Source: Ylistrum balloti
Lineage: Eukaryota
Length of the DNA stretch: 64,000 nucleotides
Direction: 5' to 3'
NCBI RefSeq assembly: GCF_031769215.1
Contig: NW_026782435.1
Location: 1-64,000 of the forward strand
Shown here: positions 1,611-21,983 of the stretch, in pieces
How the letters are laid out: the number at the start of each line of letters is the position of its first letter
Position numbering within the stretch: position 1 is the first letter of the stretch
Notes under the pieces: model-generated
Database searches by the model: none
The model's input: the letters and a program-made list of their open reading frames with translations, nothing else
Told to the model about the DNA's origin: nothing
Position numbers and translations under genes: made by a program

Positions 1611-3478
1611 AAATCAAATCTGACTTGAAACCTTTAAGACCCTTGATAGGTGAGTGGCATCAACTTGACTGGGCACGGTGTGAGAAAAGTTACAGCAGAT
1701 TCCTCAAAACCAGACTCACAACAACAAGCACCATCAATGGAATTAATTGGACACCAAACTATTAAGTTATATTTCTGTTCACAAACGCAAATATCTCAGT
1801 ACACTCAGATTTATCCCTATTATAACACACATCAAATTCTTCTCTCCGTTCCTATAGGTCCTCACAATACACACATTAAACGGGTCGTATTCTGGTGAAA
1901 GACATAATTCAATATATAATACATTCCAATATAATATCTTGGACTTTGGTAATACAGGAATAAAAATGTTGTACAGGAATAAAAATGTTGTATAGAATGT
2001 ATGTTCATTCAAACTGCCCTTTAAAAGTTACATCTTAACGTATTTAAAGTGCTGTATACTAATAAAGGTTTTTAGTTTATTTTTAATATATATCCTTTCT
2101 TTATTTTCTTACAGTTCAAACTATAAACAGGATTAAAACAGAAAAAGAGGAGAAAAAGTTCATGGAGACCAAAGCTTTTCATGACGCACAAGAGAAACTC
2201 GGAAAGAACAGAGTCATAATGATCAAGGGTAACACAGGAGACGGCAAGACTTCGACTGCCTTTCAACTCATGGACTGGCTGATCAAGGAGCAGCAATGCA
2301 GGCAACCTCTTCAGCTTCATGAAATCAAGAAATTAGATAAATTGTCTCCAGACTCGAGTCTGGTTACTTTTATTGATGATATTTTTGGAGAGAGAAATGT
2401 TAGAAATACGGATGTAGCTGAGTGGAACAAAAGAATTAATAATGTAAAAACACTGTTTGTAGATCAACAAATGAAGGCCAATTTTTTGCTTGTTACTATT
2501 CGTAATGAAATATATAATGATTTGAAAGAGCGATCTTTGGAACCAGTTTTTACCAAAGATAACCTTATTGACATGAGTTCGGACACATACAGGATTTTAG
2601 AGGAAAGAAAAGAACTTCTACAAAAATATCTGCCAAACAATTATAAATGGGAAGAGAAAGAAATAGAAAGTATTGTAAAATCTGCTTCAAGCATTGGCTT
2701 TCCCCAATGCTGCCACCTTTTCTATAACTCCGTGGAATTGCAGGCAAAACGTGGGGAATTTTTTGAGAAACCTTTTAAATTTTTGAATGAAGCATTGTCT
2801 AGATTATCAGAATGTTGTGCCATTTTGTTTCTTTTCCTCAATGGAGGGGAGATAAAAGTTAAAGATCTAGACCCAAACAGTGATAAAATCAACAAAACAT
2901 TGTTAGAGGAATCATTTAATATTAATCTGATTGATGGTGAGGAGGACAGATCCTCATTGAAGTACGAGAGAAAAGTAGGATTTGTAAAAGAAAGTTTAGA
3001 CAGATTGCTAGGATTTTTAGTGGTGAAGGAGAAAAATTGGTTTGGTGATGAAGTATACAGATTTAATCATGATTCTGTACGTGTCACAGTAGCTCGTTTG
3101 TATTGGAACAAAACACCAGTTGGTTATATACAGAATTGTCCAGTGAAATTCCTCGGTTATCTCACAACCTCAAAAACATCCACAGACATGATTGTTTTAT
3201 CATCAGATAATTATACACGTCTGTGTGAACGTCTGCTCCGAGAGTTTGAGTGTGAGGAGTATGATTATGATAGTAGATATATTATTAAGTCTCTAGATGT
3301 ATGGAAAGATCCCGTATTTGTTGAAAGATTCGATGAGTTGTTGAATGAGAAAAAAGTTGATAAACGTGCTGTGTTAAATACGGTATGTAAATATGGTGTA
3401 AAAGAATGTGGTTTATATCTTCTGAGTGTGGGAGTCAAACCTGACAAGTACACAGACTTGTGGTCATTGATTATGTAG
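1611..3478 (+). CDS. 3' exons of an nSTAND3-type (STAND P-loop NTPase) gene, probably ankyrin-associated, truncated by an LTR insertion; join(1611..1649,2115..3478), 5' exons not identified
   Basis: Walker A GNTGDGKT and Walker B LVTFIDDIFG; typical downstream GFPQCC/LF and YRFNHDSV motifs. Ankyrin-like start AVLNTVCKYGVKECGLYLLSVG. Acceptor tttacag at 1610, donor gtgagt at 1650, acceptor cttacag at 2114, phases 1/1 in frame with ORF 2162..3478. The stop TAG falls inside the LTR end. Confidence 0.8.
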
Positions 3479-4252: not shown

Positions 4253-7204
4253 TCAGTTTTTCTTGGTGACAAGAGACACTACTGCTTCTGTCATCTGTGG
4301 AGAGAGATTTAAAAATTCTTTTGAATTAGCTAGTGTCAACAAGTATCTGACTCTACGCAGCCAATCAGGCTCCTGGCCTGACATGACAAACTCACCTGAG
4401 GTGAACCACTTGGGTGGAGCTCTAACACGCTCCGACCTCCTGAGCTCAGTCTCTGGCTCCCGAGGTTGCTCACCCTCAACGTCTTGGGGTGGATCGTCAT
4501 CAACAACCTCATCATCCCAGTCAGCTGTATGTGGACCGTCATCCTGCTGAACTGGAATATCTGTAACTGTAACAGATTCTTCTTCCGGTGTGGAAACATG
4601 GACTACCACTGATGAAGTATCACTTTGATCTTCGGGCTCCACCTCCACATCCTCACTCACTGTTTGTTTTGGTTTAGGCTTCCTATGCCTTGGCGCAGGT
4701 TTAGGCCTTGTAGGTGCTTTATCATCCATGCTCCTGGAATCTGGCGTCAAATATCCAACTGGAAGAAGATGGTTTCTGTGCATGGTTCTTTTTCTTCCAG
4801 TACCATCCTCCCGTTGAATGATATATACTGGAATATCATTGTTTGGCTGACTTTCCACTATATAAATTTCACTCTCCCATGGGTCAGCAATCTTGTGCCG
4901 GCCTTTGAATGCAAGTACTTTGACAAGTACTCTGTCTCCTGGCTCCAAGGTGGCACCACGTACTCGTACATCATACCCCACTTTCTGTTTCCTTTGTGCT
5001 TGATCAGCATTCAATGAAGCCAAATGATATGCTTGCTTCAAACGTTCACGTAACTCCTCAACATATGCAGAATATGAGGGTTGATCAGAGTCTTCATCCT
5101 GCTCCCTAACGCCAAAAGCAACATCAACTGGTAGTCTGGGGTGTCGACCGAACATCAGGTAGTACGGTGAATACCCTGTTGTCTCGTGCCTAGTGCAGTT
5201 GTATGCATTAGTGAAGGGTCCAATAAATGACTTCCAATCTTTCTTTTGGTCTGGATTCAATGTGCGAAGCATGTCAAGCAAAGTTCTGTTAAACCTCTCA
5301 CACAAACCATTTCCTTGCGGATGATAAGGACTTGTCCTCGACTTCTCTATTCCTAATAGCAGACATAACTCCTTTATGAGATCTCCTTCAAAGTTAGCTC
5401 CCTGGTCGAGGTGGATTCGCTTGGGCATCCCATAATGGATGAAGAAGTTATGGTAAAGAGCATCTGCAGTAGTATGAGCCGACATATTCCGAGTAGGTAT
5501 GGCTTGTGCATATTTAGTGAAGTGATCGGTTATCACTAAAAGATATTGATAATTTCCTTTGGCTGGTTCTAGTGTAAGAAAGTCAATACACACAAGTTCC
5601 ATTGGCTGTGATGTTTGTATGCTGACAAGTGGGGCTCGGGTTCTTGCTGGTGTCTTGGCTCTGGTACAGCGATCGCACAGCTTCACCCATTCCTCTATGT
5701 CCTTGCACATTCCAGGCCAATAGAATCGATCCTGTATGCTTGACGTCGTCCTATCACGCCCAGGGTGTCCTATGTCATTGTGTAAGGCCTGAAGCACCCT
5801 CCGTCTCAATGACAAGGGCAATACTAACTGAAGTGTATCATCTCGAGTCTTCTTGTATAGGACCCCTCTGGAGAGAGTTAAGTTGTAAAATTTCTTTGCA
5901 TAGACCTTGAACTCATTACAATTATCCATAAATCTTCTTGGCCTCTGATGATTCCTGACATAGGGCAATATGTCACCAATTGCTCCGTCCTCACTCTGTA
6001 GTTTCCTCATCTGTGTGGGTGTGTATTCTCCGAAGTCTTGTCCAATGTCGGTATCATCTAAGACCTCAGCTGACATGCACATGGTTTCCATAAATGGAGA
6101 TCCCTCAGTGATGGCATTGCACACAGCTTTGATGCATTCCCTGGTAATGTGTTGGATGTCTGTCCTACAATCATCCTCAAGTCCTGGGTATCTTGATAAA
6201 GTATCTGCATCCAGGTTGTTCTTTCCAGGCTTGTAGCGTATGTCAAAGTTGTATGTAGCTAAGGCCGACAACCAGCGATGGCCTGCAGCATCCAGTTTTG
6301 CCTTTGAAAGTACATAGGTTAAAGGGTTGTTATCCGTGTAAACTGTGAAGTGGTTTCCATACAAATAATCATGAAACTTGTCGGTAATGGCCCACTTCAT
6401 AGCTAAAAATTCTAGCTTATGAGCTGGGTAATTCTTCTCCGTTTTTGTAAGTCCACGACTGGCGTAAGCAACTGGACGGCATGTACCATCATGGTCCTGA
6501 TACAAAACAGCTCCCAAACCGATTGAACTGGCATCTGTATGAAGCTCAAATGGTTTGGTGTAATCGGCAAATTCAAGAACAGGTGGTGATGAAAGAGCTT
6601 CTTTCAAGTTTTGGAATGATATTCTCTCCCGGGTGCCCCATTTCCACTCAACTTCTTCCTGCTTCTTAGACTTTGCTGACTTCTTATGAGTAGGTGGTAG
6701 TAAATCAGTGAGCGGTCTGGCAATATGAGCAAAGTTGGGTACAAATTTGCGATAATATCCGGCAAATCCTAAAAATTTTCTTACATCTTCAGGCGTTGAT
6801 GGTTCTGGCCAATCTCGAATCTTTGCAATCTTGTCTGGATCAGCTTCTATACCAGCCTCCGATACAATATGTCCTACGTACTTCACTCGATTCCTGAAGA
6901 AACAGCATTTCTTTGGCGACAACTTCAAATCGCAATCCCTGAGTCTCTGAAATATCTTTTCAAGACGACGTAAATGTTCTTCATAAGTACCTGAAAACAC
7001 AATAAGATCATCCAAATAGATAAGACAAATGTTCAAATGAAGATCACCAAGACATTCTTCCATTAGACGCTGATAGGTCGCTGGGGCGTTGGACAATCCA
7101 AAAGGCATACGGTTAAATTCGAAAAATCCTAACGGTCCAACAGTGAATACTGTTCTTTCTTTGTGTGGTTCATCTACAGTGAAGGAACCTGAATGCTTTG
7201 TCAT
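4253..7204 (-). CDS. pol: Ty3/Gypsy pol, 5'-truncated: C-terminal half of RT, RNase H, integrase (983-aa ORF; roughly the first 8-10 aa come from the Kolobok end)
   Basis: RT motifs MPFGLSNAPATYQR and IYLDD. RNase H LHTDAS...KLEFLA...YTDNNPL. Integrase HHCC (LHNDIGH...CDRC) and D-D(35)-E (CIDF, HLDQG, NGLCERFN). Domain order RT-RH-IN is the Gypsy order. No gag, protease or RT N-terminus. Confidence 0.95.
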   Translation of the reverse strand: MTKHSGSFTVDEPHKERTVFTVGPLGFFEFNRMPFGLSNAPATYQRLMEECLGDLHLNICLIYLDDLIVFSGTYEEHLRRLEKIFQRLRDCDLKLSPKKCCFFRNRVKYVGHIVSEAGIEADPDKIAKIRDWPEPSTPEDVRKFLGFAGYYRKFVPNFAHIARPLTDLLPPTHKKSAKSKKQEEVEWKWGTRERISFQNLKEALSSPPVLEFADYTKPFELHTDASSIGLGAVLYQDHDGTCRPVAYASRGLTKTEKNYPAHKLEFLAMKWAITDKFHDYLYGNHFTVYTDNNPLTYVLSKAKLDAAGHRWLSALATYNFDIRYKPGKNNLDADTLSRYPGLEDDCRTDIQHITRECIKAVCNAITEGSPFMETMCMSAEVLDDTDIGQDFGEYTPTQMRKLQSEDGAIGDILPYVRNHQRPRRFMDNCNEFKVYAKKFYNLTLSRGVLYKKTRDDTLQLVLPLSLRRRVLQALHNDIGHPGRDRTTSSIQDRFYWPGMCKDIEEWVKLCDRCTRAKTPARTRAPLVSIQTSQPMELVCIDFLTLEPAKGNYQYLLVITDHFTKYAQAIPTRNMSAHTTADALYHNFFIHYGMPKRIHLDQGANFEGDLIKELCLLLGIEKSRTSPYHPQGNGLCERFNRTLLDMLRTLNPDQKKDWKSFIGPFTNAYNCTRHETTGYSPYYLMFGRHPRLPVDVAFGVREQDEDSDQPSYSAYVEELRERLKQAYHLASLNADQAQRKQKVGYDVRVRGATLEPGDRVLVKVLAFKGRHKIADPWESEIYIVESQPNNDIPVYIIQREDGTGRKRTMHRNHLLPVGYLTPDSRSMDDKAPTRPKPAPRHRKPKPKQTVSEDVEVEPEDQSDTSSVVVHVSTPEEESVTVTDIPVQQDDGPHTADWDDEVVDDDPPQDVEGEQPREPETELRRSERVRAPPKWFTSGEFVMSGQEPDWLRRVRYLLTLANSKEFLNLSPQMTEAVVSLVTKKN

Positions 7205-7354: not shown

Positions 7355-7377
7355 GTGACGTCACAAGTGGAAGCGCG
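7355..7377 (+). repeat. Left subterminal inverted repeat GTGACGTCACAAGTGGAAGCGCG, containing a full CRE palindrome
   Basis: Exact reverse complement of 14924-14946. Confidence 0.9.
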
Positions 7378-7583: not shown

Positions 7584-10500
7584 ATGGGTGACCCGTCGCC
7601 GACTGCCGGACGTTCAGGAAAAAGATGTGTTGTTTTCGGTTGCAGCAACACCAGTAAAGATGGAGTTTCCCTTCATTTCTTTCCATTGAAGAATAATGAT
7701 ATTTGTAGAAAGTGGACTTCATTTGTAACAACGAAAAGGAAGAACTGGGCCGGAGCCACCAAACATTCTGTAATTTGTTCGAAACATTTCGACATGTCCT
7801 GTTACCCGGCGAAGTATAAGATCATGGAAAGTTTAGGCCAGTCAGTCCGAAGAAAGGACCTGCTTCCAGATGCTGTTCCATCTATACACGCTTCAGAACC
7901 AAGCCCGATGTCTAATATTACAGACACGCCACCACCGCCAAAGAGACAAAGAATGGCTTTTACTAAGAGAGAAAATGCTAGGGTATGTACAATTTAGTAA
8001 TGACGTGCGTATTGGTATTTTCATAATTTTGTTAAACATTCAGACAACTAGAATTCTAGTCAATGTTTCATTGGTCTATATTACACATATGTATAATGGT
8101 GCCCCAACTTTCTATACTGGGAAGAGAATCAAATATACAGCATGTACATTTAAAGTGAAGGTATTATACCAGTATCAGCTAGTATATACCAGTCACACCT
8201 TTTTGTCTCAAATTTGAATTATGATATGAAATTTTAAAAGTCATTATTATTTTGATTTTGATCATTTGTTTTCCCCTCCAGATACTGTCACAGCATTTCC
8301 AAGCAACAGAACTGATGGAGATTGACCATGATGTTGACAACGGTTCGAATAATACCATGGTGTGCGGTATGGAGAGTGATAACTCAACACCACATGTAAG
8401 AATTTGAGGATAAACAATCTAAAGTGCAATTAGTTCATGGAAAGGAAACATCTGACAATTTATTTTAGCATATAGAATCTAAATGGTATTAATAGAGTTT
8501 GTAACTATGTCCTAGTTTTTAGCATCCATTCCGTAGAAGTTAGAACCAGATTCAGCTTTGTTGGATATATTTTGATATTGATACCAGATCAGAGTTCATA
8601 AAGAAGTATTTGAAAAGTGCTTTATTATAACAGTCTTATACCTAGATTAAAAATAAGCTTGTTTTCTTAAAAGTTAAAAAACTAGTATTTTTTCTTGATA
8701 TTACGGAGTCTGATATAGGCAGATAACAGAGAGGCATGGGGCAGAAGGGATACTTATGTAACAGGGTTTTCATGTGTTTTATTGAAGTTTGTGTATTTTA
8801 ACGTTTTTTTAGACACCATCAGGATCAACAACAGCTTTAACAAGAACCTATGGTTGCCAAGTAGGTTTGAAGAAGCCAGCAAGAAGGTCAAAGAAAATAC
8901 AAACAAGTTTTAAAACTCATAACCAAGGTACAGTGATTAATCAAAATTATGCATCAGAAATTGATATTGGGTGTAGTTAAATTTATGCAGATGTATTAAC
9001 AGTTCATCATATTGTAATGAAGACAGTTCTGTTTGATTTGCAAAAAGGAAGATAAATATACACTCAATCCTCTGAGTTAAAATTGCAATTATAATATCTT
9101 GTTCACAAAACAAATGATTTGTGTAGGGTGTTTGATGGAGTCCCCCCTACAATTTTTTGCAATTTTTAATGAATTTGTTTTCCAGTACACTTCCGAGTTT
9201 CGTTAGTAATACACCCATCTTGAATCCTGATGTTAGTATTATGACCTTGTTTCCAGTGCTTTTGTAAACTGGTACAACCTTTTTCTTCAGAGTTTTTTTA
9301 ATTCTGGTATCTGCATTATGGATGGCGGATTGTTAAATAGTTACACTTTACTACTACTCTCTGCTCCAAAGGAACAGGTGCAGCCCAATGTTACGTTGCT
9401 GTAAAGGTGTTGAATAGGAGAAAGTTATCATATTCTGAGCTCAGAAAAAAAGTGTTTTCATTCTCTTAGTGTGTTACACCACTTTTATCATTTTTCTTTA
9501 TTGTAGTATGTCAGACGACATCCAATGAATGCAAGTCTGTGGCCATCCAGTGTGATATTATAAAACCAGAACAAACGTCAAACACCAACATGTGCGAGGA
9601 CCACAATCTTACTTTTGATCATGATGGCACAGAGGAGGACAATGGAGATATGGATGACCATAGTCCCCAAGAAGACTTGCTTGACAGTTCATTTAATGCG
9701 TCATTTCAGAGTGAAGCAGATGAAGATGTTGACTCTGATAGCAACATAGATGATGAAAGGTGATTTTTTGTTATGATCAATTGTAAAGTTAAATGATTGT
9801 TATTAAAGGTCACTAGACCTCTGTGTTAAAAAGGTTTGTGGGTCATAATTAGTAACATTTTACCACATAATGGTACTTGTACATCTTCATCTATATCACT
9901 TTCTTTATCCCACCACCACTTTTTGGATCTCTTGTGTTATTACTAAGGCTAAATTATTACTCAGTGCAAGTGCCTTTCGTTGGCCTGGCAAATTATGACA
10001 AAATACACTGCCCAAACCAATAATTTAAAGTAAAAATTTTTTTTTTCAGGGATGATGGAAGAGACAGAAAATTTTTGGTTTACGAATCAGAACTCCTAAA
10101 ATTATTTTCAGCATGCCCAAGATGCTCCAGCCCAACATTTGGACATATTCAACAGCTGCGCGGTACAGCAGTGAAAATTCTACAGGACTGTGGTTTTTGT
10201 TCCTATACCAATGTTTGGAAGAGCCAACCAATGATCGGGTCAATACCAGCTGGAAACTTACTGCTTTCATGTGCAATTCTGTTTTCTGGGTCGCTTCCAA
10301 GCAAATCACTGCGGATGTTCAACTTTATGAACATGGCCACAATATCTTGCGATACATTTTTGCAACATCAGAGGTATTTTCTTCAGCCAGCCATATTGCA
10401 AGTTTGGAATGAGCATCAGCAGTGCTATTTGGACAGTGTGATTCAAGAAAATAGGGAAATTGTATTGGGAGGAGATGGACGTGCAGATACCCCAGGCCAC

Positions 10501-13339
10501 TCTGCAAAGTATGGCAGCTACACGATGATGGATTTAGATGAATCCAGAGTAGTCGACGTGCAATTGGTTCAGGTAATTGTTTTTAGTTCACCTGTCAGCT
10601 GAAAGCTCTTGTTCTATTGTGATCATGTTTTGTTTTCCCATATGGAAAAAATGGGTCAGAAATGGCCCCTTGGGGGCCTGCAATGGGCAAACAGAGGCCA
10701 TGTGAACTTGCAAATGTGAAGTAAATCTGTCCATACATGTTACTAGAAAATCTGTGATTTGTTTTGTACTATTATCATATGATTCCATCATGGGAGTGTA
10801 ACGTAGACAGAAAAATCTCCACCTGATGGTTGAGATTTTTTGTTCACTTTTCAACCCTACAATTGATTTTTTTTCTCCCACACTCATGATGCTGAAAACC
10901 TTGTTTCAGTGTTGGTATAATAAATTTTTTTGTGAATGAAATTGTGATGTCATTTGGCAGCTTTTGTGACATCATAGCATGTTTAAACTGTCTTTTCCCT
11001 AGTGGCTGTAAGACAGCCTTGTCTTTTCACAGGTGAATCCTTTTGGAAGTGTTGGGAAAAAAATCAAATAAATCCCTTGCCTTTACATTCAATTCATTTA
11101 TCAATTTCACACATTCTATTTTTAGAGTAACGAAGTCAAAAGTAGCTACCACATGGAAAAAGAAGGGTTGATCAGAAGTGTGAAGACCTTCAATGATGCT
11201 GGAATTACTATACAGAAGATTGTTACAGATCGTCATGTACAAATTTTGAAATGGGTCAGGGAAAATATGCCTAAAACAAAACACTGTGTAGATATCTGGC
11301 ATGTAGCAAAGGGTAAGTTTTCAACAAAAAATGCTTTTCATATGTATTTCATATAACACTCTTGGTTGTTGAAGTACTCGTATTCTAAGTGTAATTTAAG
11401 TTTGATATGTAAGTCATTTTTAGATAGTTAAAATTGTTTATGAAGACCCAGGTTTAGAGGAAAACTGTCCTTTATAGACAGTTGTCCTTAGTATAGAGGT
11501 CAGCTACATTGCAAACTGCACCGGGTGGGTTTAATCAATCTATCCATCATACAAAGATATGCTCCAAAGCAGGTTTGACTGTAGACAACTGCATAATGGT
11601 TTGATAGTTGAATATTTCTCACTAATTTTGACATGTTTTTTTATTACTAGGATTAAAGAAAAAACTGACAGCAATATCCAAGGATAAAGATTGTGATGCC
11701 TTAACACCTTGGATAAAGAGTATCAGCAACCACCTTTATTGGGTAGCTGCATCAACTCCGTCTGCAGATCCTTCCCTAATGATGGAAAAGTGGCAGAGTG
11801 TAGCAAACCATGTACAAAACATACATGAAGGTCATGGATCTCTGTTTGAGAAGTGTTGTCATGGTGACCTGTCCGGTAGAGAAAGGCAGAAGAAATGGAT
11901 TAAACCAGGTATTTGACAATACCAGTTATTTCAGAAATTAACTTCAACTTGCATAACAATGGTAGGGAAAATGTGTTGGGTCAAACGAATAATGGACACA
12001 AATTCTATGGACATGTTTTGTGAAAATAAACCATGACCATAGAAGAAACATTAATTATTGAAAATTTCAGTCCATTAATTAATCATAATTTTGAAATGAA
12101 AATCAACAAAGTGAAAAGTAACTAGTTATTTCCTGTTATAATTCTTGAACTCTCTTTACAGCAACCAAGGTTAGTGAAAGACTAGATGATGTCATTCTCT
12201 CCAACCAGATGAAGAAAGACATTCCTATGTTGTCCACAGGACAACAGACTTCCAGCATAGAGGCATACCATTCTGTCATAAATCATTTTGCACCAAAAAT
12301 GATTGGGTTTTCATACCATGGGATGATATGTAGGTATGTAAGTGATACATGTATATTGATATGTATGTGTGTGTGTCAGAGAAGAAAGGATCCAATTATA
12401 AAGAGATTTCCAAATACCATGAAATTTAAGATTTGTGAGCTCCTTAGTTTTTAAGGGAATATAGACTTGGTATATTAGCCTTTTTGTGTTAAAATTCCTA
12501 GTATTACTTTTTCCACAATTAAGCTATGATCATCTAACTTTGTAGATTATTTACACTTATACTTTGTGCTAGATTCAATGCCTACAACTCGCATTTTTTA
12601 CACAGCTCTTGGTAAAGATTCACGTTGGAAGTATAACTTGGCTTTGAATTTGGAGTATGTTAATGACATTTGATGTATACCATGACTTACCTATACTGCA
12701 TGAAGTTTAATTTACACAGTAAATGCGATGCAATGGAACATATAATCAACTTATATCTTTTCCATTATATTTCACTACAGGTTGCAGTTAGCAGCCCTTC
12801 ACTTTAATGAAAACCGCTCCAAATTACAAGCAGTCGATAAAGACGGTGTGTTGCGTTACCGCTTGGAATTTCCCAAATATAAAAAAGGAGAACATATCGT
12901 CAGGAAAGTCAAAGTTCATAGCACCTTTGGTAAGTTTTATGTATAGAATTTGAATTATTAGTATTAATACATTTGCTTCTCGTATATAAGTTTCAGTATA
13001 TTATCTTAAGCTGCCTATCGTGACCTGCCAGACATTTAAGCGCACACTTAATCAACAGAATGTGTCATTTGAATGTTTTTAGGTAATTGTAACTTTTCTG
13101 TAAATGTAGAAATCGAATGTACAGTTAAAATATGAATCATGAAACTTGCATTTTTTCTTTCAGATTACGTGGAAAATCTTACAGAAGTTGTCATGAGCAT
13201 GGCAGAAAGATCTTCACTAGCAAAGCAACGAATTCCTATTCCACCCACAGTTCCTCCACCGTTGTGTCATGACTTTCTTCACCCAGATATGTCGGATGCC
13301 ATAGCAGGAATGCATTCAAGATTTTCTATGAACTTTTGA
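7584..13339 (+). CDS. THAP-domain DDE transposase 1 (Kolobok type), 781 aa; join(7584..7982,8282..8395,8813..8927,9507..9759,10050..10572,11126..11312,11651..11908,12162..12333,12781..12929,13164..13339)
   Basis: THAP CVVFGC..FP..W..CSKHF plus AVPS box. CxxC pairs CPRC/CGFC. Catalytic candidates GGDGRADTPGH, VTDRH and QTSSIEAYHS. All nine introns are GT-AG and phase-compatible; 2346 nt with no internal stop. Confidence 0.85.
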
Positions 13340-13589: not shown

Positions 13590-14898
13590 TCATGCTGCAT
13601 GCTGGAAGCCAGTATATTCATCATCTTCAGCTGGGAAGTTGCTCCGTACTTTGCTGACAACACAGGATGGAATTAGAACCCTCACTTTCCTGCCCAAATA
13701 ACCAAAGCACCACCTGACCAGTTGTCTGTAGGCAACATACCTACGTCGGCTGTAAAATAATGTAGGAATTTTAAATAACACCACAGCGCAAGAAATTCAA
13801 TTTTACACGAATATATATCATTTACAAAATGAAATTTTATGCTGGGCAATTAAAATTTGTAAAAGCTTTCAAGTTGTTTTTTCCTGCAAAAAAATCAGAT
13901 CTTTGAATTCCTTGTAGAGATTCTAAATCACAATTATTTAATGAAACTTATCTGACTTGAATTTTGTAAAAGTGTTTGTTTGGGACAGTAAAGACTTTGT
14001 AAACATTCCTGTAAACAAATACTTACTCTGGAGTGTCTTCCATTTCTTCCCCATACTGCTGTCTATATGCAAAGTATGCGGCCCTCAATACATGGACATT
14101 GAGACAGACTGGTTCAAAACCTGGATGGTCGATGACACAATTAACGTTTGGGACCTCTCTCCTGATGTCGTTAACTTGGTTGATTTCTCTGCAGCAAACA
14201 GATTCTGTCATCGTGGACATAGGATAGCAATTCCCACATGTACACCTTAATACAATAAAAATAACCATGGTCATATATTATGAATTTAACAGTGATTATC
14301 TGTTACTCAACTTACTGTCATATGTATTGTTCAACGACTATACGAGAATGAATTTTACTTGAAACTTCAGTCTATTTTTAACCTTTTTTCTTCATTCCAG
14401 TAATGATTATGATGCTTTAAAACCCTCCTGGAGATATAATCATGCATTTAAGAAAGATTATGTTACTGTCTAGACAAGTGTCATGTGTATTCAGAGTATC
14501 ATTTGATCGAGCTCGAGAAGACCTATTGGTGCTATTGCACATGGTCTACAACCTATATTTGTTTATACATAATATCATAGATAATTTGATATCAAAACTG
14601 TTGACTCTATGGTCTAACTTCAGGTATAAAATAAGATACTACCATAAGCTATATGTTTACATTCTTACCAGTCGGTGTTACCAATGCGGTCAGCTTGGCT
14701 ATCAACAGTTTCATCTTCGTTCTCGCTGTCTTCTACGTCGTCTTCATATGGTTCAAACTGGTACGGAAGAACCCCACAATGTGATGTCTCGTCAACTACA
14801 TCGTTGTCTGAATCTTCGAAAGGCGATGATTCGCAAGACAAACGAAGAGCGCCATCAGTAGAGTACGAATCATTGTCGGAGTAGTCAGTACCGTCCAT
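13590..14898 (-). CDS. KolX: KolX protein 1 (homologue of the P2X7 C-terminal ballast), 202 aa; complement(join(13590..13749,14027..14245,14669..14898))
   Basis: Acidic N-terminus with PYQFEP, then WCTCGNC..ESVCC..CVIDHPGFEPVCL..RYVAYRQLVRW..GRKVRVLIPSCVVSKVRSNFP..YTGF. GT-AG joins, 609 nt open. No transmembrane or ectodomain exons. Confidence 0.85.
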
Positions 14899-14923
14899 GT
14901 TGAATTTTGTGATTTTCCCTCGA

Positions 14924-14946
14924 CGCGCTTCCACTTGTGACGTCAC
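14924..14946 (-). repeat. Right subterminal inverted repeat of element 1 (contains GTGACGTCAC at 14937-14946)
   Basis: Exact reverse complement of 7355-7377; the palindrome is 39 bp upstream of the KolX1 ATG. Confidence 0.9.
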
Positions 14947-15132
14947 CAATACCCGGATGTAAATCAGGGTAATTTGATCGCTTGCTTGATTAACATCTCG
15001 AAGCAGGTGTGAATCGGCGCGTTTAGACGGATATATCTCGGAAACGGATGGTCGAATTTCGATGCGGTTTTCGGCATTTTTGTTCTTATACAACAGCAAA
15101 TCCATTGAAAATCGAACCTATCAACATTCAGG

Positions 15133-17833
15133 TTGACCAACAAACGTTCACGTGGGAAGAGATGTGTAGCGTATGGATGTGGAAACACCACTTTAGACGG
15201 TGTTTCACTTCATTTTTTCCCATTAGACAGACCGGAAATATGCAAAGTTTGGACTGCATTTGTGCGGAGGAAAAGGGATTTGTGGGACGGGCCAACAAAA
15301 CATTCAGTTTTGTGTTCGGAACATTTCGGTGAGGACTGCTACCCGATGCAGTACAGATTTCTTCAATCAATGGGACGTACACCACCGAAAAAGAAAACGC
15401 TAATAAAAGATGCTGTGCCAACGATTAACAAAGGCTGCACCAACGTAGAGGAAACGCCTGTCAAAAGACCACGGACTGCTTTCGCAAAAAGAGAGAACAG
15501 AAGGGTAATTATTACATAATACATGAAGATCTAGGGCCTATGTATATCATATAAGTTATAGTAGTATCTGAGTAGAAAAGGTAATGAGTAATGCAGCCTT
15601 CCTTAGTGGACAATACTCCTATTTAGCATTTAATAAACCTTTTCCCAGTAAATGTTTCAGTGTATGCGAGGTATCTTCAGTTTTAACTTAAATGTACGTA
15701 TTAAACAGCTACACTGTGACTACATGTACATTATTTGTATGATAAATTTGATTTTTTTTTATAGATAGTCGAGCAATGTTTGAAAGAGAGTTCCACGGTA
15801 TCCACAGACACTCAGGTGGAGGAAGATCCTGATGTTTCAGCCAGTGATGAGGTTATGGAATTGCCAGAGGAACATGTACAGACAAGAAATGACCATGATT
15901 ATTTCTCCTGCAATTTCAAGGTACTAAAAATGATACTCATAAGGCCAAAAAAATTATATGCGAGTTTACTGTCACCATACCGACCCTAAACTTTTAATTC
16001 AGGTTTTCACACATGCACTGTAAAAGTCAAGGTTGTTGCTCTTATAAAAGTTATGTATAAAACCAGATTTACAGTTATTGCCCTTTATAGTTTTTCTTTG
16101 TCCGCACCATATTTACAACACTGTTTTACATATATGTAGGAACTCCAAACTTTATGTACAGAATGTTCCATATGTCACAGCAAACTACATGTTTCAAACA
16201 ACATAAATAGTGAAATGGTCTCTGATCTTGTGTGTCAAACATCGCCATGGGCATCTGTTGGGCTCTTGTAAGGTTGGTCAAGGAACATACTTTTTTTCCC
16301 ACCTTACATATACATAGGTTATGGAGGTTCAACTGTTAATGTACATCATAACTACCGTGTACAAGAAAAGTTTCTATTACAGGAAACACCATCAAAGACA
16401 AAAACCTGTGGCACGCAGCTCTCCCTGAAACCACCCAAGAGGAAAACGGTCAGGATACAAGTGGCCCCCAATGCAGTGGAGAAAGGTAAATTGTAACCTG
16501 CTTATGCATGTCAATAGGGTCTGTAAGTCTCGTCATGTGACCTGCAAGATTGTGACATTTTGAAAAGTCATAACTGTATGAAAAAATAGAGTATTACCAG
16601 TTGGTACAATACAGCTGTAAACTGTTTTAAGTACTTGTCCTAATTACAACATTTTAAAATTACTATTCCATTCATTCAATATTTGAATAAATCACAAGAC
16701 ATTTTTACTTGCATTAATGCATTGTGATTTTGTTTTATCTTATAGGATGTCAAACTCATGCTCCAAGACCAAAGGTGAGACATGCAGAAGTTCAATGTAA
16801 TCTTCTAAAGCCAGTGGTGGAGAAAGATGAAGAAACCAACTTGGAAAGTGATAGTGAGTACGAAGATCATCTAGACCTTTTCAAGACCAACAGTAAAGAT
16901 CTAGACGACTCCTATCATCCGGATTCTGGTCCAGACGACTCGGACACAGAGTTAGATATGGAAGAAAATGAGTATGTGTTGTAACATGTCTGACATTTTG
17001 CAGAGAAAAATAATTTATTTTGATACTTTCTGGCTTGTGTTTCGGGACTTTGATATGGCATGCTTTCTCAGTCATATCAATCCATTGTGTGCTAAAACAT
17101 CATTGCATTGCCTTTTTGGATGGCACTTTGATCTAACGGTGTTGTCCCAAGATGGAATAGAACCCTAACCTCAGTCTTGCTTATATCATTTCTCTATAAT
17201 AATATCATGTCATAGTGCCCTCATTCATATTATGGCAATTATGTATGTAGAATGTCATGAACATTTATGTATTGCAGAGATGTGCTACACAGTGGACAGA
17301 GCAGAGACAGACTCCTCATAATTGAAGAAAGCAAACTGCTTGAACTTTTTGATAAATGTAGACACTGTTTATCACCATGCCAAGGAGAAGTGACACGAAT
17401 GATCGGTACCATGTGTTGTGTGCATCAAGAATGTGACATGTGTGGTAGGACCTTTAAATGGAGAAGCCAGTCAATGGTGGGATCCCTTCCAAGAGGAAAT
17501 GTCCAGCTGTCTGCCAGCATTTTATTTTCTGGATCGTTGCCCTCAAAGACTCTAAGAATTTTTAACTTTATGGACATCCCGGTAATATGCCATGACACGT
17601 TTTTCAAGCATCAGCGACATTATTTACAGCCTACAATTCTAAGGATGTGGACAGAAAAACAAGTGCAATATTTTGCAGAAATGTGCGAAAGTGACAATGA
17701 CATTTGTATAGGAGGAGATGGTCGATGCGATACCCCCGGACACTGTGCTAAGTTTTGCAGTTATTCACTGATGGATTTGGACAGAGGGACAGTCGTAGAT
17801 ATACAGTTAGTTCAGGTTGGTATTTCTAATCGT

Positions 17834-17865
<32 letters not shown>

Positions 17866-20204
17866 TCCACTCATTATATATTCCACAATTTCTGAGACCA
17901 GGCTTAACCACTGGACGACTGTGGCCCCCGTTAATTTTATGTAAATTTATATGTAGAAACTGCTGATAGAAAATGTGGTCATGAATACATACAGAAACAA
18001 TTTCAATATATATATATATATATATATCTACAATCTACATGTACTTTCCAGAACATGAGTTATGTTAATTTTGGTACATTGTGTAATGTTAAGATTTTGA
18101 TCAATTTCAGAGCAATGAAGTCAAACATAGTGTCAACATGGAAAAGGAAGGGTTAATACGGAGCGTGGACAATCTAAAACGCCATGGGATCAACATAGAT
18201 ACCCTAGTCACCGACCGACATGTCCAGATCAGAAAGTGGGTGAGGGAGAACATGACAGAGACCAATCACTGCGTTGATGTATGGCATGTTGCAAAAGGTA
18301 TTGCATTTTCTTTAAGTGTTTGTGTTTAGCATAAACAAAACAAGAAGCCCAATCAGTATTAACAGTCACCGTAGTAAATAGTTTGATTTCAGTTTGTTTT
18401 GTTTTGCTAAGGGCTTTACTTCAGATACTTTGTAGACCATGTCCTAAGGACTAAATAAATATCAAATGGAATTAAATGTATGAACACACAACTCAATTTA
18501 AAGTATAGAATAATTTTTTATGTTAAAATATAATAGGTTTTGTATTAAAATGCATATGAAATATTCTTTAGGTTTGAAGAAGAAGTTGTTGGCACTGTCA
18601 AAAGAAAGAGATTGTGGTGAACTTGAAAGCTGGATAAAAAGTTTAACCAATCACTTATACTGGGTTCCTGCATCAACGCCCTCAGCAGATGGCGCTTTGA
18701 TGTACCAGAAGTGGGTTTCTGTAGTAAACCATGTCCAAAATATCCATGATGGTCATGGTGATCTGTTTCCTTGCTGTCTGCATGATGACTTGAGAACACA
18801 GGAAAGGAAGAAGAAATGGATAAAACCAGGTATTTTTCCTGTTATGGCATTGACTCAATTATTGTGTATCCTACCTTTAACTTGCTTACTTATTCATTTG
18901 GTTCGAAATTGGTGACGTATCAATAATTCAAATCATAACTAAATTACGAATGACATTTATCACTTGCTTAAAAACATTTTAAGTGCCTAATTTCTTTAGC
19001 AATGACATTTTTCACCTGAATGAAAAGCACATCCAGGAAAATGGTATCTTTAGTTTCTTGTTCTTAGCATGGAATTAATATTCGTGTTCTAAATTCCTTA
19101 TGATCCCATATTATATTTTTACTTCATCATTTGAAATCCTCACTTTCACTTTTCAGAGAGTAAAGTAATGGAGAAGCTAGAACTGATGTTGACATCACCA
19201 CAAATGAAAAAGGACATTCCCATGCTATCAACACATCACCAAACTTCAGAACTAGAAGGGTACCACTCAACAGTTAACCAGTTTGCCCCTAAAATGCATG
19301 GCTTTTCATTCAATGGAATGTTGTGCAGGTATATGATCACATGATTCTCATAAGACTATTATTTCTTTAGACATCAATTTGTACAGACAAGTTGATCGTA
19401 TATGTATATCTGTCTCAAGATCTAACATCATCAACAGGTTTTGGAAATATCATTATTCACTAGTAGTCTACCTGTCTCAAAACTCCTGTGGTGAATATTG
19501 CAATGTTAAAAGAGATTTAGTGTTGTAGCTAGATGTAAGATATGTTAAAATGAGTATGTAAAAGATTTAGGCAGCCAGTCTTAATTCTTAAGATATTGAT
19601 GATACTTAATCAGGAAAGTTTAAATATTGTTGCATCTCTTTGAATAGGGTGATTCTAGCTGCACTTCACCACAATGAAAATGTGAGAAGAGAACAAGCCA
19701 TGACATCTGCTGGGGAGAAAATGTTTAAGATAATCTACCCTAAACAGAAGAAAGGTGGATACACTGTCAGAAAAGTCAAAACAAAACAAACATTTGGTAA
19801 GTATTATGTTGCATATGAAGACGAGTTCAATATTTTAGGTTAGGTTCAGTATTCTATATATTGCAGTACATGATTCTTCAATTAACAACTTGCATTTTAG
19901 TTGCAGGAAAATATGTCCATGTATACAAAACATTTAAAGTCTTTACTAGCAATAGTGTCAGATTTTGTGTAATAGTGATTGGAAAAAATAATAAAACCAG
20001 TGTACTTGTATATGTACTTTTTATCTTACAGACTATGTACATGAACTGATGGCAGAAGTGCTACAAGTGGCAGAAAAAAGTACGATGCAAGTGGAGGATA
20101 TGCTACTTAAAGACCAACCCCCACCACTCTGTAGTGATTTTGTCAGACCTGTAAAAATGGAAGCTGTCGCATTGATGGAATCAAGATTTAACATGAACAT
20201 TTAA
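15133..20204 (+). CDS. THAP-domain DDE transposase 2, about 777 aa, no ATG (begins TTG); join(15133..15504,15765..15920,16383..16485,16746..16971,17278..17815,18111..18297,18572..18829,19157..19328,19648..19796,20032..20204)
   Basis: THAP CVAYGC..FP..W..CSEHF plus AVPT box. Motifs GGDGRCDTPGH, VTDRH and QTSELEGYHS. Nine GT-AG introns with the same phases as transposase 1; 2334 nt open. In-frame TGA at 15106 with no ATG before the THAP domain. Confidence 0.8.
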
Positions 20205-20560
20205 AATACATACATGTACATGAATTTTCATCTGTTTTTTAATATGGTCTGCAAGTCTGTTTTACTTTACTTCTGTGTACCAACTGACGTTTTAGGTAGT
20301 AGTCTTATAGAAGAAAAGTATTTTCAATTTCGACAAAATGCACATTTCCCAAGGAGTTTTTAAAAACGTACCTACTGGTAATCCTCCGTTTTCATAGTTA
20401 TGATTGTTCAAGTTAAGTGGTATGTTCTAGTAGGTCACATGACGAGACTTACAGATCCTATTACAGTTTCAAGTGTATATATGAATAAAAAACAACAATC
20501 AGATATCAATTATAATTTTATTGTTTCATGTCATTCTTTCAATGTTTTCAACACATATTT

Positions 20561-21950
20561 TTAATGCACAAAATTAAAACCTTTAAAATTTCCATTTGGT
20601 GCAGGAAATGTTTCTCTAATAATCTTCACAGCACACGCAGGTAATGGCACTCTTATGCTTTTTCCCAAGTACCCCCAACACCATCTCACAAATTGTCTGT
20701 ATGCTGTATAGCGGTATCTCCTGATAAAACAAGAACAATATATTCTGTAATCATTGTTAATGCCAAGTTTGCCATTAATCTGCGGAGGATGCAAGCACTA
20801 GTGAATTATGGTAAACACAAGTAACTCTACAATACATATGTGTAACAATTCCAAACCAGATTTTCAGAAATGTTGACTTATTATTGAAAATCTATTTTAT
20901 CTTGTCTGGTTATTGGTTCTTTTGCAGTATTTTAGACCTGTAACTTGATAGACAAGTTTGTAACATCATTTTTAAAATATCTTCTTAACAAATGAATTAT
21001 TTTATTATGTTTCAAGTTTTATAATAATAAATTTGATGCTGTAGATAAACATCATAACTTACTCAGGGCATTCTGGTATCTCTCCATGAAGTTGTCTGTA
21101 CTGGAAATAAGATGTTCTCAGCACATAAATATCCAAACAGACTGGCCCAAATCCAGGATGGTCTGTTATGCACTGTATCCCTGGTATGTCGTCTTTTGTG
21201 TTCAGTACACTGTGTATCTCACTACAGCACCTGCACTCCTCAATGGTAGGCATAAGACTGCAGTTACCGCAAAGACACCTGTAACATATAAAATTTTCTG
21301 TGTTTTATACATAATTCACTAGTATGTTGGTGTGAAAATACCTTTAAAATGTCTTGTTAGAAGTTTTCTATTCAACACTTTATAGTACATACCAGTACCA
21401 TTTGACATAGCAAAAGAATACACTTTGTTTCCAGGAAATGTTCTCCTTTGTAAAAAGAAATGCTATGCACATTAATTTATGTAACACAAAATATTTAGGG
21501 GTGGGTATTATGTAAAAGTCAAATAATTGTAAATGCAAAAAAAAGGCATTGGCTGTTATTATCTCGACAAAGTCGGACTTGTGAGGTTGAGCAAGTGGAG
21601 AAAAAATCCTGAAAATCCGCATTTGTTAACATGCACGATGCATTTTGAAAAGGGAAAATTCCTGGAAAAAAAATAATCATACGTGAAAGCTAACATCTCT
21701 GAACATACCAGTCTAAGGATCCCAGGCGATCAGCATTATCATCGCTACGTGTAGACGACGCAGGTGAAGATGGACTGCTTTCACCATCTACCTCGGGTTC
21801 AAATTGGTATGGTTGAATACCAGCTTGTCTCTCTATAACCTCCGTGTCGTAATCAGAAGATTCAAAGCTTAAATTCAGGCTGCATTCTTCCGAATTGTTT
21901 GAGTCTTCGAACCACTCGCACTCGCTGTTATCACTGTCCGACATTATCAT
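20561..21950 (-). CDS. KolX: KolX protein 2 (P2X7-ballast homologue), 205 aa; complement(join(20561..20720,21063..21278,21709..21950))
   Basis: PYQFEP, WCLCGNC..ECRCC..CITDHPGFGPVCL..RYTAYRQFVRW..GKSIRVPLPACAVKIIRETFP..FKGF. GT-AG joins, 618 nt open. Confidence 0.85.
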
Positions 21951-21973
21951 TTCTTAGACCAAGCGCTACCCTT

Positions 21974-21983
21974 GTGACGTCAC
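21974..21983. promoter_or_regulatory. GTGACGTCAC palindrome (CRE consensus) in the right subterminal region of element 2
   Basis: Perfect 10-bp palindrome 24 bp upstream of the KolX2 ATG, same context (CTTGTGACGTCAC) as in element 1. Function is inferred. Confidence 0.5.

What the first reader, a model, noticed from the sequence alone, without database searches (positions are those of the whole stretch)
13590..21950. Two free-standing P2X7-ballast (KolX) genes: a candidate Zn/guanine-nucleotide-binding accessory protein of transposition
Seen: both proteins keep WCxCGNC, xCC, C..HPGF..VCL, RY.AYRQ..RW, PSC/PAC, R..FP and a terminal (Y/F).GF, behind a very acidic N-terminal tail containing PYQFEP. 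Established: Kolobok elements encode a second protein, KolX, related to the P2X7 cytoplasmic ballast; structures show that ballast binds two Zn ions through a Cys cluster and binds GDP/GTP. Inference: the Cys cluster and several basic residues of that pocket appear conserved (the His of P2X7 RH is Tyr here). KolX could be a nucleotide-sensing regulator or cofactor of the transposase, with the acidic tail acting as a DNA mimic against the basic THAP domain. To my knowledge KolX function is uncharacterised.
Basis: partly seen in the sequence, partly recalled or inferred. Interest (0 to 1): 0.7.

Follow-up and report, generated by a model that had tools for sequence, protein, structure and literature searches.

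The report
KolX genes of two scallop Koloboks
The two small genes are real and intact, but each is the already described second gene (KolX, a free-standing relative of the P2X7 "ballast" domain) of a young Kolobok DNA transposon in a scallop genome, and what KolX does is still unknown.

Summary
Observation confirmed. KolX2 is identical to an NCBI protein of Ylistrum balloti. Its AlphaFold2 model matches only the P2X7 ballast among solved structures (Z 10.3-11.7; next 3.7). All seven zinc-binding cysteines are kept. Of the five GDP contacts of rat P2X7 only two remain (R546, R578), and H547 is Tyr.

Neither gene is a host gene. Each lies tail-to-tail behind a THAP-DDE transposase inside a Kolobok element of the Kol0 lineage (TTAA duplications, AG...CT tips), in two families with 99-100% identical copies elsewhere in the genome. 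The same layout occurs in an oyster and a sponge.

The KolX-ballast link, the conserved cysteines and the partly conserved GDP site are already published (Kojima & Bao 2022; Rump et al. 2020). The scan also noted a Kolobok/KolX element elsewhere in this genome.

Two modest additions: a conserved motif, (I/V)xPYQFEP, in the otherwise variable acidic tail across at least seven phyla, and a conserved subterminal inverted repeat in both families. Both window elements lack intact tips. Interest is low to moderate.

The parts
14669..14898 (-). KolX1 exon 1: ATG at 14898, acidic disordered tail, PYQFEP at 14749-14766, ends in phase 2 inside the Trp codon of WCxCGNC
   Evidence: start codon agrees with NCBI protein P0001 from a decayed sister copy
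14027..14245 (-). KolX1 exon 2: Cys cluster (C78, C80, C83, C94, C95, C113) and the DHPGF..VCL helix region
   Evidence: weak PF20478 match
13590..13749 (-). KolX1 exon 3: RRRYVAYRQ..PSC..R..FP..YTGF, with stop codon
   Evidence: PF20478 E 4.5e-12; aligns to human P2X7 residues 544-592
21709..21950 (-). KolX2 exon 1: ATG at 21950, acidic tail, PYQFEP at 21795-21812
   Evidence: spliced product identical to P0043
21063..21278 (-). KolX2 exon 2: Cys cluster (C82, C84, C87, C98, C99, C117)
20561..20720 (-). KolX2 exon 3: RYRYTAYRQ..PAC..R..FP..FKGF, with stop codon
   Evidence: PF20478 E 6.5e-9; whole protein 56 bits
7183..15134 (.). Kolobok family A element carrying transposase A and KolX1. The window copy lacks 2 nt of the left tip, the last 5 nt (CCTCT) of the right tip, and both TTAA duplications.
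   Evidence: genome self-search; flank comparison with copies on C475, C157, C536 and C835
15135..22187 (.). Kolobok family B element carrying transposase B and KolX2. The window copy lacks the first 391 bp (left TIR, subterminal motif, transposase ATG). The right end is intact with TTAA.
7584..13339 (+). Multi-exon THAP-DDE transposase of family A, convergent with KolX1
   Evidence: THAP PF05485 E 9e-16; exon-by-exon homology to B showing GGDGRxDTPGH, VTDRH, CxxH and ExYHS motifs
15135..20204 (+). Multi-exon THAP-DDE transposase of family B, cut off before its start codon in this copy, convergent with KolX2
   Evidence: THAP E 8e-15
7355..7377 (+). Left copy of the 23-nt perfect subterminal inverted repeat of A (GTGACGTCACAAGTGGAAGCGCG), 174 nt from the canonical tip
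14924..14946 (-). Right copy of the same 23-nt repeat, 193 nt from the canonical tip and 26 nt upstream of the KolX1 ATG
21965..21983 (-). Family B version of the subterminal motif (GTGACGTCACAAGGGTAGC), 204 nt from the right tip and 15 nt upstream of the KolX2 ATG. Its left partner survives only in full copies elsewhere.

Best explanation
What it is (shown). KolX1 and KolX2 are the second genes of two diverged families of Kol0-lineage Kolobok DNA transposons in the scallop Ylistrum balloti. Each lies tail-to-tail behind the element's THAP-DDE transposase gene. Each protein has two parts. The first is a disordered acidic N-terminal tail of about 75 residues carrying one conserved short motif, (I/V)xPYQFEP. 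The second is a C-terminal domain of about 125 residues with the P2X7 cytoplasmic-ballast fold and its complete seven-cysteine cluster, which holds two zinc ions in P2X7.

How it most likely works (inferred, not shown). KolX is a trans-acting accessory subunit that the transposon needs to propagate. The zinc-stabilised ballast domain would be the working module. It may bind a phosphate-bearing ligand such as a guanine nucleotide, through the invariant Arg/Tyr/Arg triad that lines the GDP site in P2X7. The PYQFEP motif in the tail would be the docking peptide that ties KolX to its partner, most plausibly the transposase or the transposase-DNA complex. I hold the identity at about 0.95, 'needed accessory factor of transposition' at about 0.5, and any particular ligand or partner well below that.
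For: Identity:
- Gene models; KolX2 is identical to NCBI protein P0043.
- PF20478 at 56 bits against a cut-off of 23.5.
- AF2 model of KolX2 with pLDDT 89-98 over residues 71-200.
- It matches only P2X7 chains: Z 10.3-11.7, 115-128 residues, rmsd 3.0-4.3 A, next hit Z 3.7. The homologue model and the ESM Atlas give the same result.
- The seven cysteines align to P2X7 C477, C479, C482, C498, C499, C506 and C572.

Transposon gene, not host gene:
- Both genes lie inside TIR-bounded, TTAA-flanked, multi-copy elements with 99-100% identical copies.
- KolX is intact in the young copies (A: window, C157, C475; B: window, C339, C698, C331, C566) and broken in older ones.

Selected function:
- KolX1 against KolX2 gives pN 0.35 against a saturated pS of 0.91, and their introns align no better than random.
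- The same convergent KolX/THAP-transposase layout occurs in an oyster and a sponge.

Pocket and motif:
- The R546, Y550 and R578 equivalents are invariant or at least 90% conserved in 105 homologues.
- PY[QLE]FEP is found in 66, and a looser form in 90, of 116 homologues of 160 aa or more, a median 35 residues before the Cys cluster, in tails that are otherwise unalignable and net acidic.
- The motif lies outside the Pfam domain and in the low-confidence part of both models.

Literature: KolX equals the ballast fold in the Kol0 lineage (PMC9587614).
Against: - No functional datum exists for any KolX, and I found none in the literature.
- Three of the five GDP contacts of rat P2X7 are not kept: H547 is Tyr, R574 is Val, K583 is Ala. 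Nucleotide binding is therefore not implied by sequence.
- The conserved Arg/Tyr/Arg could be purely structural.
- A relative of family B (C695, C825, C558, at 93-94% identity) lacks KolX exon 2 in all three copies. KolX in cis is thus not needed for a copy to exist, although supply in trans is possible.
- The complex prediction of the THAP exon with the tail gave no verdict.
- No RNA run is available to show expression.
- The structure of KolX1 itself was not predicted. Its fold is inferred from 45% identity to KolX2.
Confidence: 0.6

Rival explanations
1. KolX is a self-limiting regulator or inhibitor. Its acidic tail mimics DNA and occupies the basic THAP domain of the transposase, perhaps released or engaged according to the GDP/GTP state of the ballast domain.
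For: The tails are strongly acidic in both proteins and across the family, with a median net charge of -0.21 per residue. The transposases carry an N-terminal THAP domain. KolX and transposase lie in the same element, each reading inward from an end that carries the same subterminal motif.
Against: The one test possible here, THAP exon with KolX1 tail, gave ipSAE 0.00, which the tool scores as no answer. What is conserved in the tail is a specific hydrophobic/aromatic motif, not the charge pattern; that points to peptide docking rather than generic DNA mimicry. The GDP pocket is incomplete.
Confidence: 0.1
2. KolX is the element's interface with the host rather than with its own transposase. 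PYQFEP would dock a conserved host protein (nuclear transport, chromatin, DNA repair or a silencing factor), and the ballast domain would be the effector or a decoy.
For: The motif is nearly unchanged from sponges to fish, while the transposases and the rest of the tail diverge; this fits a slowly evolving host partner. The ballast domain was later co-opted into host proteins such as P2X7 and nanor (PMC9587614).
Against: The motif matches no known short linear motif that I could recall; this was not tested with a tool. No interaction data exist. Frog homologues replace the motif with a different N-terminus.
Confidence: 0.2
3. These are domesticated host genes (nanor-like ballast proteins) that merely lie next to transposon remnants.
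For: NCBI annotates them as ordinary protein-coding genes ('P2X purinoceptor 7-like'). Both window elements have damaged tips and are probably immobile.
Against: Identical or 99% identical copies of the whole units, KolX included, lie at other loci between TIRs with TTAA duplications. Older copies carry frameshifts and stops. The genome holds at least 48 exon matches from many KolX lineages.
Confidence: 0.02

Closest known systems
KolX proteins of the Kol0 lineage of Kolobok DNA transposons (type element Kolobok-1_XT; Kojima & Bao 2022, PMC9587614)
   Same: A second gene beside a DDE transposase. TTAA target duplication and 5'-RR..YY-3' tips. Ballast-like C-terminal domain with seven conserved cysteines.
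   Different: These are new families in a pectinid bivalve. The paper lists Kol0 in vertebrates, annelids, cnidarians and sponges. The conserved N-terminal PYQFEP motif and the subterminal GTGACGTCAC repeat are not mentioned in its main text; its supplementary alignment was not read.
Cytoplasmic ballast domain of the vertebrate P2X7 receptor (PDB 6u9v, 6u9w, 9e3m)
   Same: Same fold (Z about 11, 26-30% identity over about 120 residues). Same seven zinc cysteines. R546, Y550, R578, F581-P582 and G590-F591 are kept.
   Different: KolX has no P2X channel part. P2X7 has no acidic tail and no PYQFEP. GDP contacts H547, R574 and K583 are replaced, C573 is absent, and the family has its own invariant Arg (R176 in KolX2). 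KolX is encoded in three exons here, whereas the P2X7 ballast is reported as one exon (exon 13; Rump et al.).
Ballast-like 'ZCD' proteins of Metazoa and zebrafish nanor (Rump et al. 2020, PMC7016195; PANTHER PTHR36981)
   Same: Short proteins with a C-terminal zinc-cysteine ballast domain. Only R546 and R578 of the GDP site are kept outside deuterostomes, and H is sometimes Y.
   Different: That paper treated them as host genes with N-termini 'without obvious homologs'. Here they are shown to be transposon genes, with a conserved N-terminal motif.
GTP-binding insertion domain of the Drosophila P element transposase / THAP9 (review PMC7776569)
   Same: An analogy only. It is a THAP-type cut-and-paste transposase that uses a guanine nucleotide as a non-hydrolysed structural cofactor, and it binds subterminal sites inside the element.
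   Different: The folds are unrelated as far as tested: no P element chain appears among the fold matches. The GTP domain lies inside the P element transposase, not in a separate protein. No nucleotide requirement is known for Kolobok.

Membership tests
P2RX7_C / cytoplasmic ballast domain (Pfam PF20478) | Profile match above the curated cut-off | tested here: met
   Whole KolX2: 56 bits against 23.5, residues 65-201. KolX1 exon 3 alone: 46.7 bits. Family profile against the PDB: P2X7 at E 1e-18.
P2RX7_C / cytoplasmic ballast domain (Pfam PF20478) | Seven cysteines that hold the dinuclear zinc site (P2X7 C477, C479, C482, C498, C499, C506, C572) | tested here: met
   KolX1: C78, C80, C83, C94, C95, C113, C179. 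KolX2: C82, C84, C87, C98, C99, C117, C182. All are at least 90% conserved in 105 homologues.
P2RX7_C / cytoplasmic ballast domain (Pfam PF20478) | Ballast three-dimensional fold | tested here: met
   KolX2 model: pLDDT 89-98 in the domain. 14 P2X7 chains at Z 10.3-11.7, next hit 3.7. KolX1 was not folded itself; it is 45% identical to KolX2.
P2RX7_C / cytoplasmic ballast domain (Pfam PF20478) | Guanine-nucleotide contacts of rat P2X7 (R546, H547, R574, R578, K583) | tested here: not met
   Only R546 and R578 are kept. H547 is Y, R574 is V and K583 is A in both proteins. Rump et al. report the same for invertebrate homologues.
P2RX7_C / cytoplasmic ballast domain (Pfam PF20478) | Actual binding of two zinc ions and of GDP/GTP | not testable with these tools
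   Needs purified protein.
Kolobok superfamily, Kol0 lineage | TTAA target-site duplication | tested here: met
   Family A: TTAA on both sides of C475, C157 and C536, on the left side of C835 (right end not found), and on both sides of two short derivatives. Family B: both sides of C331 and C566, and the right side of the window copy. Absent at both ends of window copy A and at copy C339 of B.
Kolobok superfamily, Kol0 lineage | Termini 5'-RR ... YY-3' with short terminal inverted repeats | tested here: met
   A: AGAGGAACCTGAATG ... CATTCAGGTTCCTCT. B: AGTGTACCTAGATTAC ... GTAATCTAGGTACACT.
Kolobok superfamily, Kol0 lineage | [quoted passage not shown] | tested here: inconclusive
   By eye, both transposases show GGDGRxDTPGH, VTDRH, CxxH (CCLH / CCHG) and ExYHS, plus an N-terminal THAP domain. 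They are homologous to the transposases beside KolX in an oyster and a sponge. No reference Kolobok transposase was available for a direct comparison or a tree.
Kolobok superfamily, Kol0 lineage | A second gene encoding KolX | tested here: met
P2X7 receptor (as the NCBI name 'P2X purinoceptor 7-like' suggests) | P2X channel domain (PF00864) N-terminal to the ballast | tested here: not met
   Only PF20478 is found in KolX2. The protein has 205 aa, and a disordered tail stands where the channel would be.
Domesticated ballast genes (nanor-like) | Single-copy host locus outside a mobile element | tested here: not met
   Multi-copy, within TIR/TTAA-bounded units.

The most novel reading that the evidence does not exclude
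KolX is the guanine-nucleotide-binding subunit of the Kol0 transposition machine, supplied in trans. It would play the part that the built-in GTP-binding insertion domain plays in the THAP-type P element transposase (positioning of the transposon ends), docked through the PYQFEP peptide. The still unexplained GDP/zinc ballast of P2X7 would then be a fossil of a nucleotide-gated transposition cofactor.
Probability: 0.1. Interest if true: 0.75.

Novelty: new member of a known kind. Interest (0 to 1): 0.3.

Why it matters
The function of the P2X7 ballast domain, with its two zinc ions and tightly bound GDP, is an open question in purinergic signalling. KolX is its free-standing, transposon-borne relative and probable ancestor.

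This scallop genome holds two young Kol0 families with intact KolX genes, near-identical full-length copies and short non-autonomous derivatives. That gives natural material for the first functional tests: metal and nucleotide content, partners of the PYQFEP motif, and excision assays with and without KolX.

There is also a practical point for annotation. Many invertebrate, fish and frog proteins named 'P2X purinoceptor 7-like' belong to this KolX-like family and not to P2X receptors, and here and in the oyster and sponge loci checked they are transposon genes.

None of this changes what was already published about what KolX is.

Tried and rejected
- Complex prediction of the family A THAP exon (115 aa) with the KolX1 tail (76 aa): score 0.00, 'no answer'. 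This is neither for nor against binding.
- RNA evidence: no RNA run holds the stretch, and only one DNA run was listed. Splicing and expression could not be checked with reads. The gene model rests on GT..AG sites, conserved intron phases and the identical NCBI protein.
- phmmer of exon 2 alone against the PDB found nothing meaningful. The profile search was needed.
- The spliced KolX1 protein could not be passed to the structure or family tools, because no reference exists for a spliced product. The only database protein close to it (P0001) comes from a decayed copy with part of the domain spliced out.
- The look-up of encoding contigs for P0043 returned nothing; the genome's own records are withheld there.
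- A dN/dS ratio between KolX1 and KolX2 could not be computed because synonymous sites are saturated. Only pN well below pS is reported.
- Searches for a remote fold relative that might hint at function (Foldseek PDB, VIA wide, ESM Atlas) gave only P2X7 and P2RX7_C.
- Longer family members (P0048, P0096, P0101, P0098) carry no extra Pfam domain, so there is no THAP-ballast fusion among them.
- The idea that the two elements form one compound transposon was rejected; see Noticed in passing.

Full report
1. THE OBSERVATION

The stretch 13590-21950 holds two small genes on the minus strand.
- KolX1 has exons 14669-14898, 14027-14245 and 13590-13749 and encodes 202 aa.
- KolX2 has exons 21709-21950, 21063-21278 and 20561-20720 and encodes 205 aa.

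All four introns begin with GT and end with AG. They interrupt the two genes at the same codons and in the same phase: inside the Trp codon of WCxCGNC, and just before the RY.AYRQ helix.

The N-terminal 76-80 residues are very acidic: 25 D/E against 2 K/R, and 21 against 3.

The spliced KolX2 is letter for letter the NCBI protein 'P2X purinoceptor 7-like [Ylistrum balloti]' (P0043). This confirms the gene model independently and names the genome: Ballot's saucer scallop, 648.5 Mb in 1372 contigs.

2. WHAT THE PROTEINS ARE

Sequence evidence:
- Pfam PF20478 (P2RX7_C) matches exon 3 of both genes on its own (E 4.5e-12 and 6.5e-9).
- It matches whole KolX2 at 56 bits against a cut-off of 23.5, over residues 65-201.
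- A profile of 105 homologues finds P2X7 in the PDB at E 1e-18. It aligns the seven family cysteines to P2X7 C477, C479, C482, C498, C499, C506 and C572 (residue numbers).

Structure evidence:
- An AlphaFold2 model of KolX2 is confident over residues 71-200 (pLDDT 89-98) and poor over the tail (53-59), so the tail is probably disordered.
- Against solved structures it matches 14 P2X7 chains at Z 10.3-11.7 (115-128 residues, rmsd 3.0-4.3 A, 26-30% identity). The next hit has Z 3.7.
- A model of the oyster homologue P0004 gives the same picture in Foldseek and in the wide search.
- The ESM Atlas returns only P2RX7_C clusters.

3. THE POCKET

Rat P2X7 contacts GDP through R546, H547, R574, R578 and K583 (McCarthy et al. 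2019, as cited by Rump et al.). In both KolX proteins R546 and R578 are kept, H547 is Tyr, R574 is Val and K583 is Ala.

In the 105-sequence alignment the equivalents of R546 and Y550 are invariant, and that of R578 is at least 90% conserved. So part of the pocket is under strong constraint while the phosphate-binding half is not kept.

Rump et al. 2020 already report exactly this pattern, including H replaced by Y, for ballast-like proteins outside the vertebrates. It neither proves nor excludes nucleotide binding.

4. CONTEXT: TWO KOLOBOK ELEMENTS

A self-search of the genome gives sharp repeat boundaries.

Family A is about 7.96 kb.
- Canonical copies on C475, C157 and C536 are 99% identical to the window.
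- They read TTAA | AGAGGAACCTGAATG ... CATTCAGGTTCCTCT | TTAA.
- Short derivatives of 0.9-1.2 kb have the same ends and duplications.

Family B has the tips AGTGTACCTAGATTAC ... GTAATCTAGGTACACT.
- TTAA lies on both sides of two internally deleted copies.
- Two full copies are 100% identical to the window (C339, C698).

TTAA duplications and 5'-RR..YY-3' tips are the hallmarks of Kolobok. A second gene, KolX, defines its Kol0 lineage (PMC9587614).

Each element carries a multi-exon transposase on the plus strand. It has an N-terminal THAP domain (E 9e-16 and 8e-15). By eye it also shows the DDE and CxxH motifs. KolX lies tail-to-tail behind it.

The same convergent pair is present around the KolX homologues of an oyster (Saccostrea echinata) and a sponge (Dysidea avara).

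The genome holds at least 48 ballast-exon matches from many KolX lineages.

5. STATE OF THE COPIES

KolX is intact in the young copies:
- Family A: the window, C157 and C475.
- Family B: the window, C339, C698, C331 and C566, all identical. C807 has an in-frame 3-nt deletion.

It is broken by stops, frameshifts or deletions in older copies.

Between the two families pN is 0.35 while synonymous sites are saturated (pS 0.91), and the introns align no better than random. KolX has therefore been under purifying selection along active transposon lineages. It is not a host gene and not a dead passenger.

The two window elements are themselves damaged at the tips.
- A lacks 2 nt on the left, where it abuts a gypsy-like pol ORF, and the last 5 nt on the right, and it has no duplications.
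- B lacks its first 391 bp: the left TIR, the subterminal motif and the transposase start codon.

6. WHAT IS ALREADY KNOWN

Kojima & Bao 2022 (Mob DNA 13:24, PMC9587614) state three things:
- KolX of the Kol0 lineage has the cytoplasmic ballast fold with seven conserved cysteines.
- P2X7 arose by capture of a KolX gene.
- Zebrafish nanor is probably a domesticated KolX.

Rump et al. 2020 (PMC7016195) described the ballast-like proteins across Metazoa, including molluscs, and the partial conservation of the GDP residues.

I found no paper on KolX function. The scan had also noted a Kolobok element with THAP and KolX gene starts elsewhere in this genome (s1-234417).

(a) A conserved tail motif. 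The acidic tail cannot be aligned between phyla except for one motif, (I/V)xPYQFEP.
- It occurs in strict form in 66, and in looser form in 90, of 116 homologues of 160 aa or more.
- These come from molluscs, cnidarians, sponges, echinoderms, hemichordates, amphioxus and fishes.
- It lies a median 35 residues before the Cys cluster.
- It lies outside the Pfam domain and in the low-confidence part of the models.
- Rump et al. called the N-termini 'without obvious homologs', and the main text of Kojima & Bao does not mention the motif.
- A conserved aromatic peptide inside a disordered acidic region is the usual signature of a docking motif. Its partner is unknown.
- Frog homologues have a different N-terminus.

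(b) A conserved subterminal repeat. Both families carry GTGACGTCACAAG... in inverted orientation.
- It lies about 175 nt from the left tip, and 193 nt (A) or 204 nt (B) from the right tip. In family A the repeat is 23 nt and perfect.
- The short non-autonomous derivatives keep it at the same distances.
- On the right it lies 15-26 nt upstream of the KolX start codon. On the left it lies about 180-205 nt upstream of the transposase start.
- Its constant distance from the tips, rather than from the genes, suggests a transposase-binding site like the subterminal sites of the P element (PMC7776569). A promoter role, through its CRE-like palindrome, is not excluded.

8. MECHANISM

Shown:
- the fold
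- the complete zinc cluster
- the partial pocket
- the disordered tail with a conserved motif
- linkage to a THAP-DDE transposase from sponge to scallop
- purifying selection
- intact copies in young elements

Inferred: KolX is a trans-acting accessory subunit. Its ballast domain is the working part and its tail motif is the tether.

The one complex prediction I could run (THAP exon with KolX1 tail) gave no verdict, and no RNA data exist.

One observation argues against an absolute need in cis. Three copies of a B-related subfamily share a 525-bp deletion that removes KolX exon 2.

9. VERDICT

The identification is correct but already published. The functional proposal is untested. These are new family members of a known kind, with two small new descriptive points. 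Interest is low to moderate, and the value lies mainly in the material the genome offers for experiments.

Noticed in passing
window 7355-7377, 14924-14946, 21965-21983; L047 1812-1830: Both Kolobok families carry a conserved subterminal inverted repeat, GTGACGTCACAAG... (23 nt and perfect in A), with a CRE-like TGACGTCA palindrome. It lies about 175 nt from the left tip and 193 nt (A) or 204 nt (B) from the right tip. Short non-autonomous derivatives (L063, L064) keep it at the same distances. It is a candidate THAP-transposase binding site, a shared promoter element for both genes, or both.
   Followed up: partly
window 15134|15135: The A-B junction is not a clean compound element. A lacks its last 5 nt and its TTAA; B lacks its first 391 bp. 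No other genome copy has this junction. Contigs of the only public DNA run do not bridge it: their loose ends show the canonical A end plus TTAA and the canonical B upstream sequence. It is either a rare rearrangement or an assembly join.
   Followed up: partly
window 4253-7204 (-) and 7183: A gypsy-like pol ORF (983 aa, RT-RNase H-integrase by its motifs) runs into the clipped left tip of element A. Its flank 7000-7183 is itself a repeat with many 98-99% copies. I observed this only.
   Followed up: no
G000 C695:22103-26695, C825:4601-9211, C558:34332-38937: Three copies of a B-related subfamily (93-94% identical) share a deletion of about 525 bp that removes KolX exon 2, the Cys cluster. These elements exist, and perhaps spread, without their own KolX.
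   Followed up: partly
window 16513-16607 and 20368-20462: A 95-nt inverted repeat (77% identity, with a 37-nt core at 92%) lies inside element B and brackets the catalytic transposase exons. It is present in all B copies. Unexplained.
   Followed up: no
window 15891-15902 (+): DHDY lies in an open stretch downstream of the THAP exon of transposase B. It resembles the HCF-1 binding motif ([DE]HxY) of THAP proteins. No counterpart was found in A.
   Followed up: no
proteins P0079, P0084, P0085, P0090, P0093, P0103, P0105, P0106, P0119 (ranid frogs): Frog KolX-like proteins lack PYQFEP. They share another N-terminus, EERR..I..LL.RY ... AFPxNP. This is a distinct, multi-copy lineage, either domesticated or from a different element.
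   Followed up: no
window 2162-3478 (+): A 438-aa ORF has an nSTAND3 NTPase domain (PF20720, E 9e-31). It is a STAND NTPase gene or fragment upstream of the transposon cluster.
   Followed up: no
G000 C200:967100-967477 (L003): A ballast-domain match lies in one uninterrupted 175-aa frame (HMM positions 67-189, no intron), only 26% identical to KolX1. It could be a different KolX lineage or a domesticated or retrocopied gene.
   Followed up: no
window 593-1060, 34077-34633, 51049-51429: Long open frames made of tandem repeats (for example the SESIGHTSLM units). These are probably satellite-like repeats and not genes.
   Followed up: no
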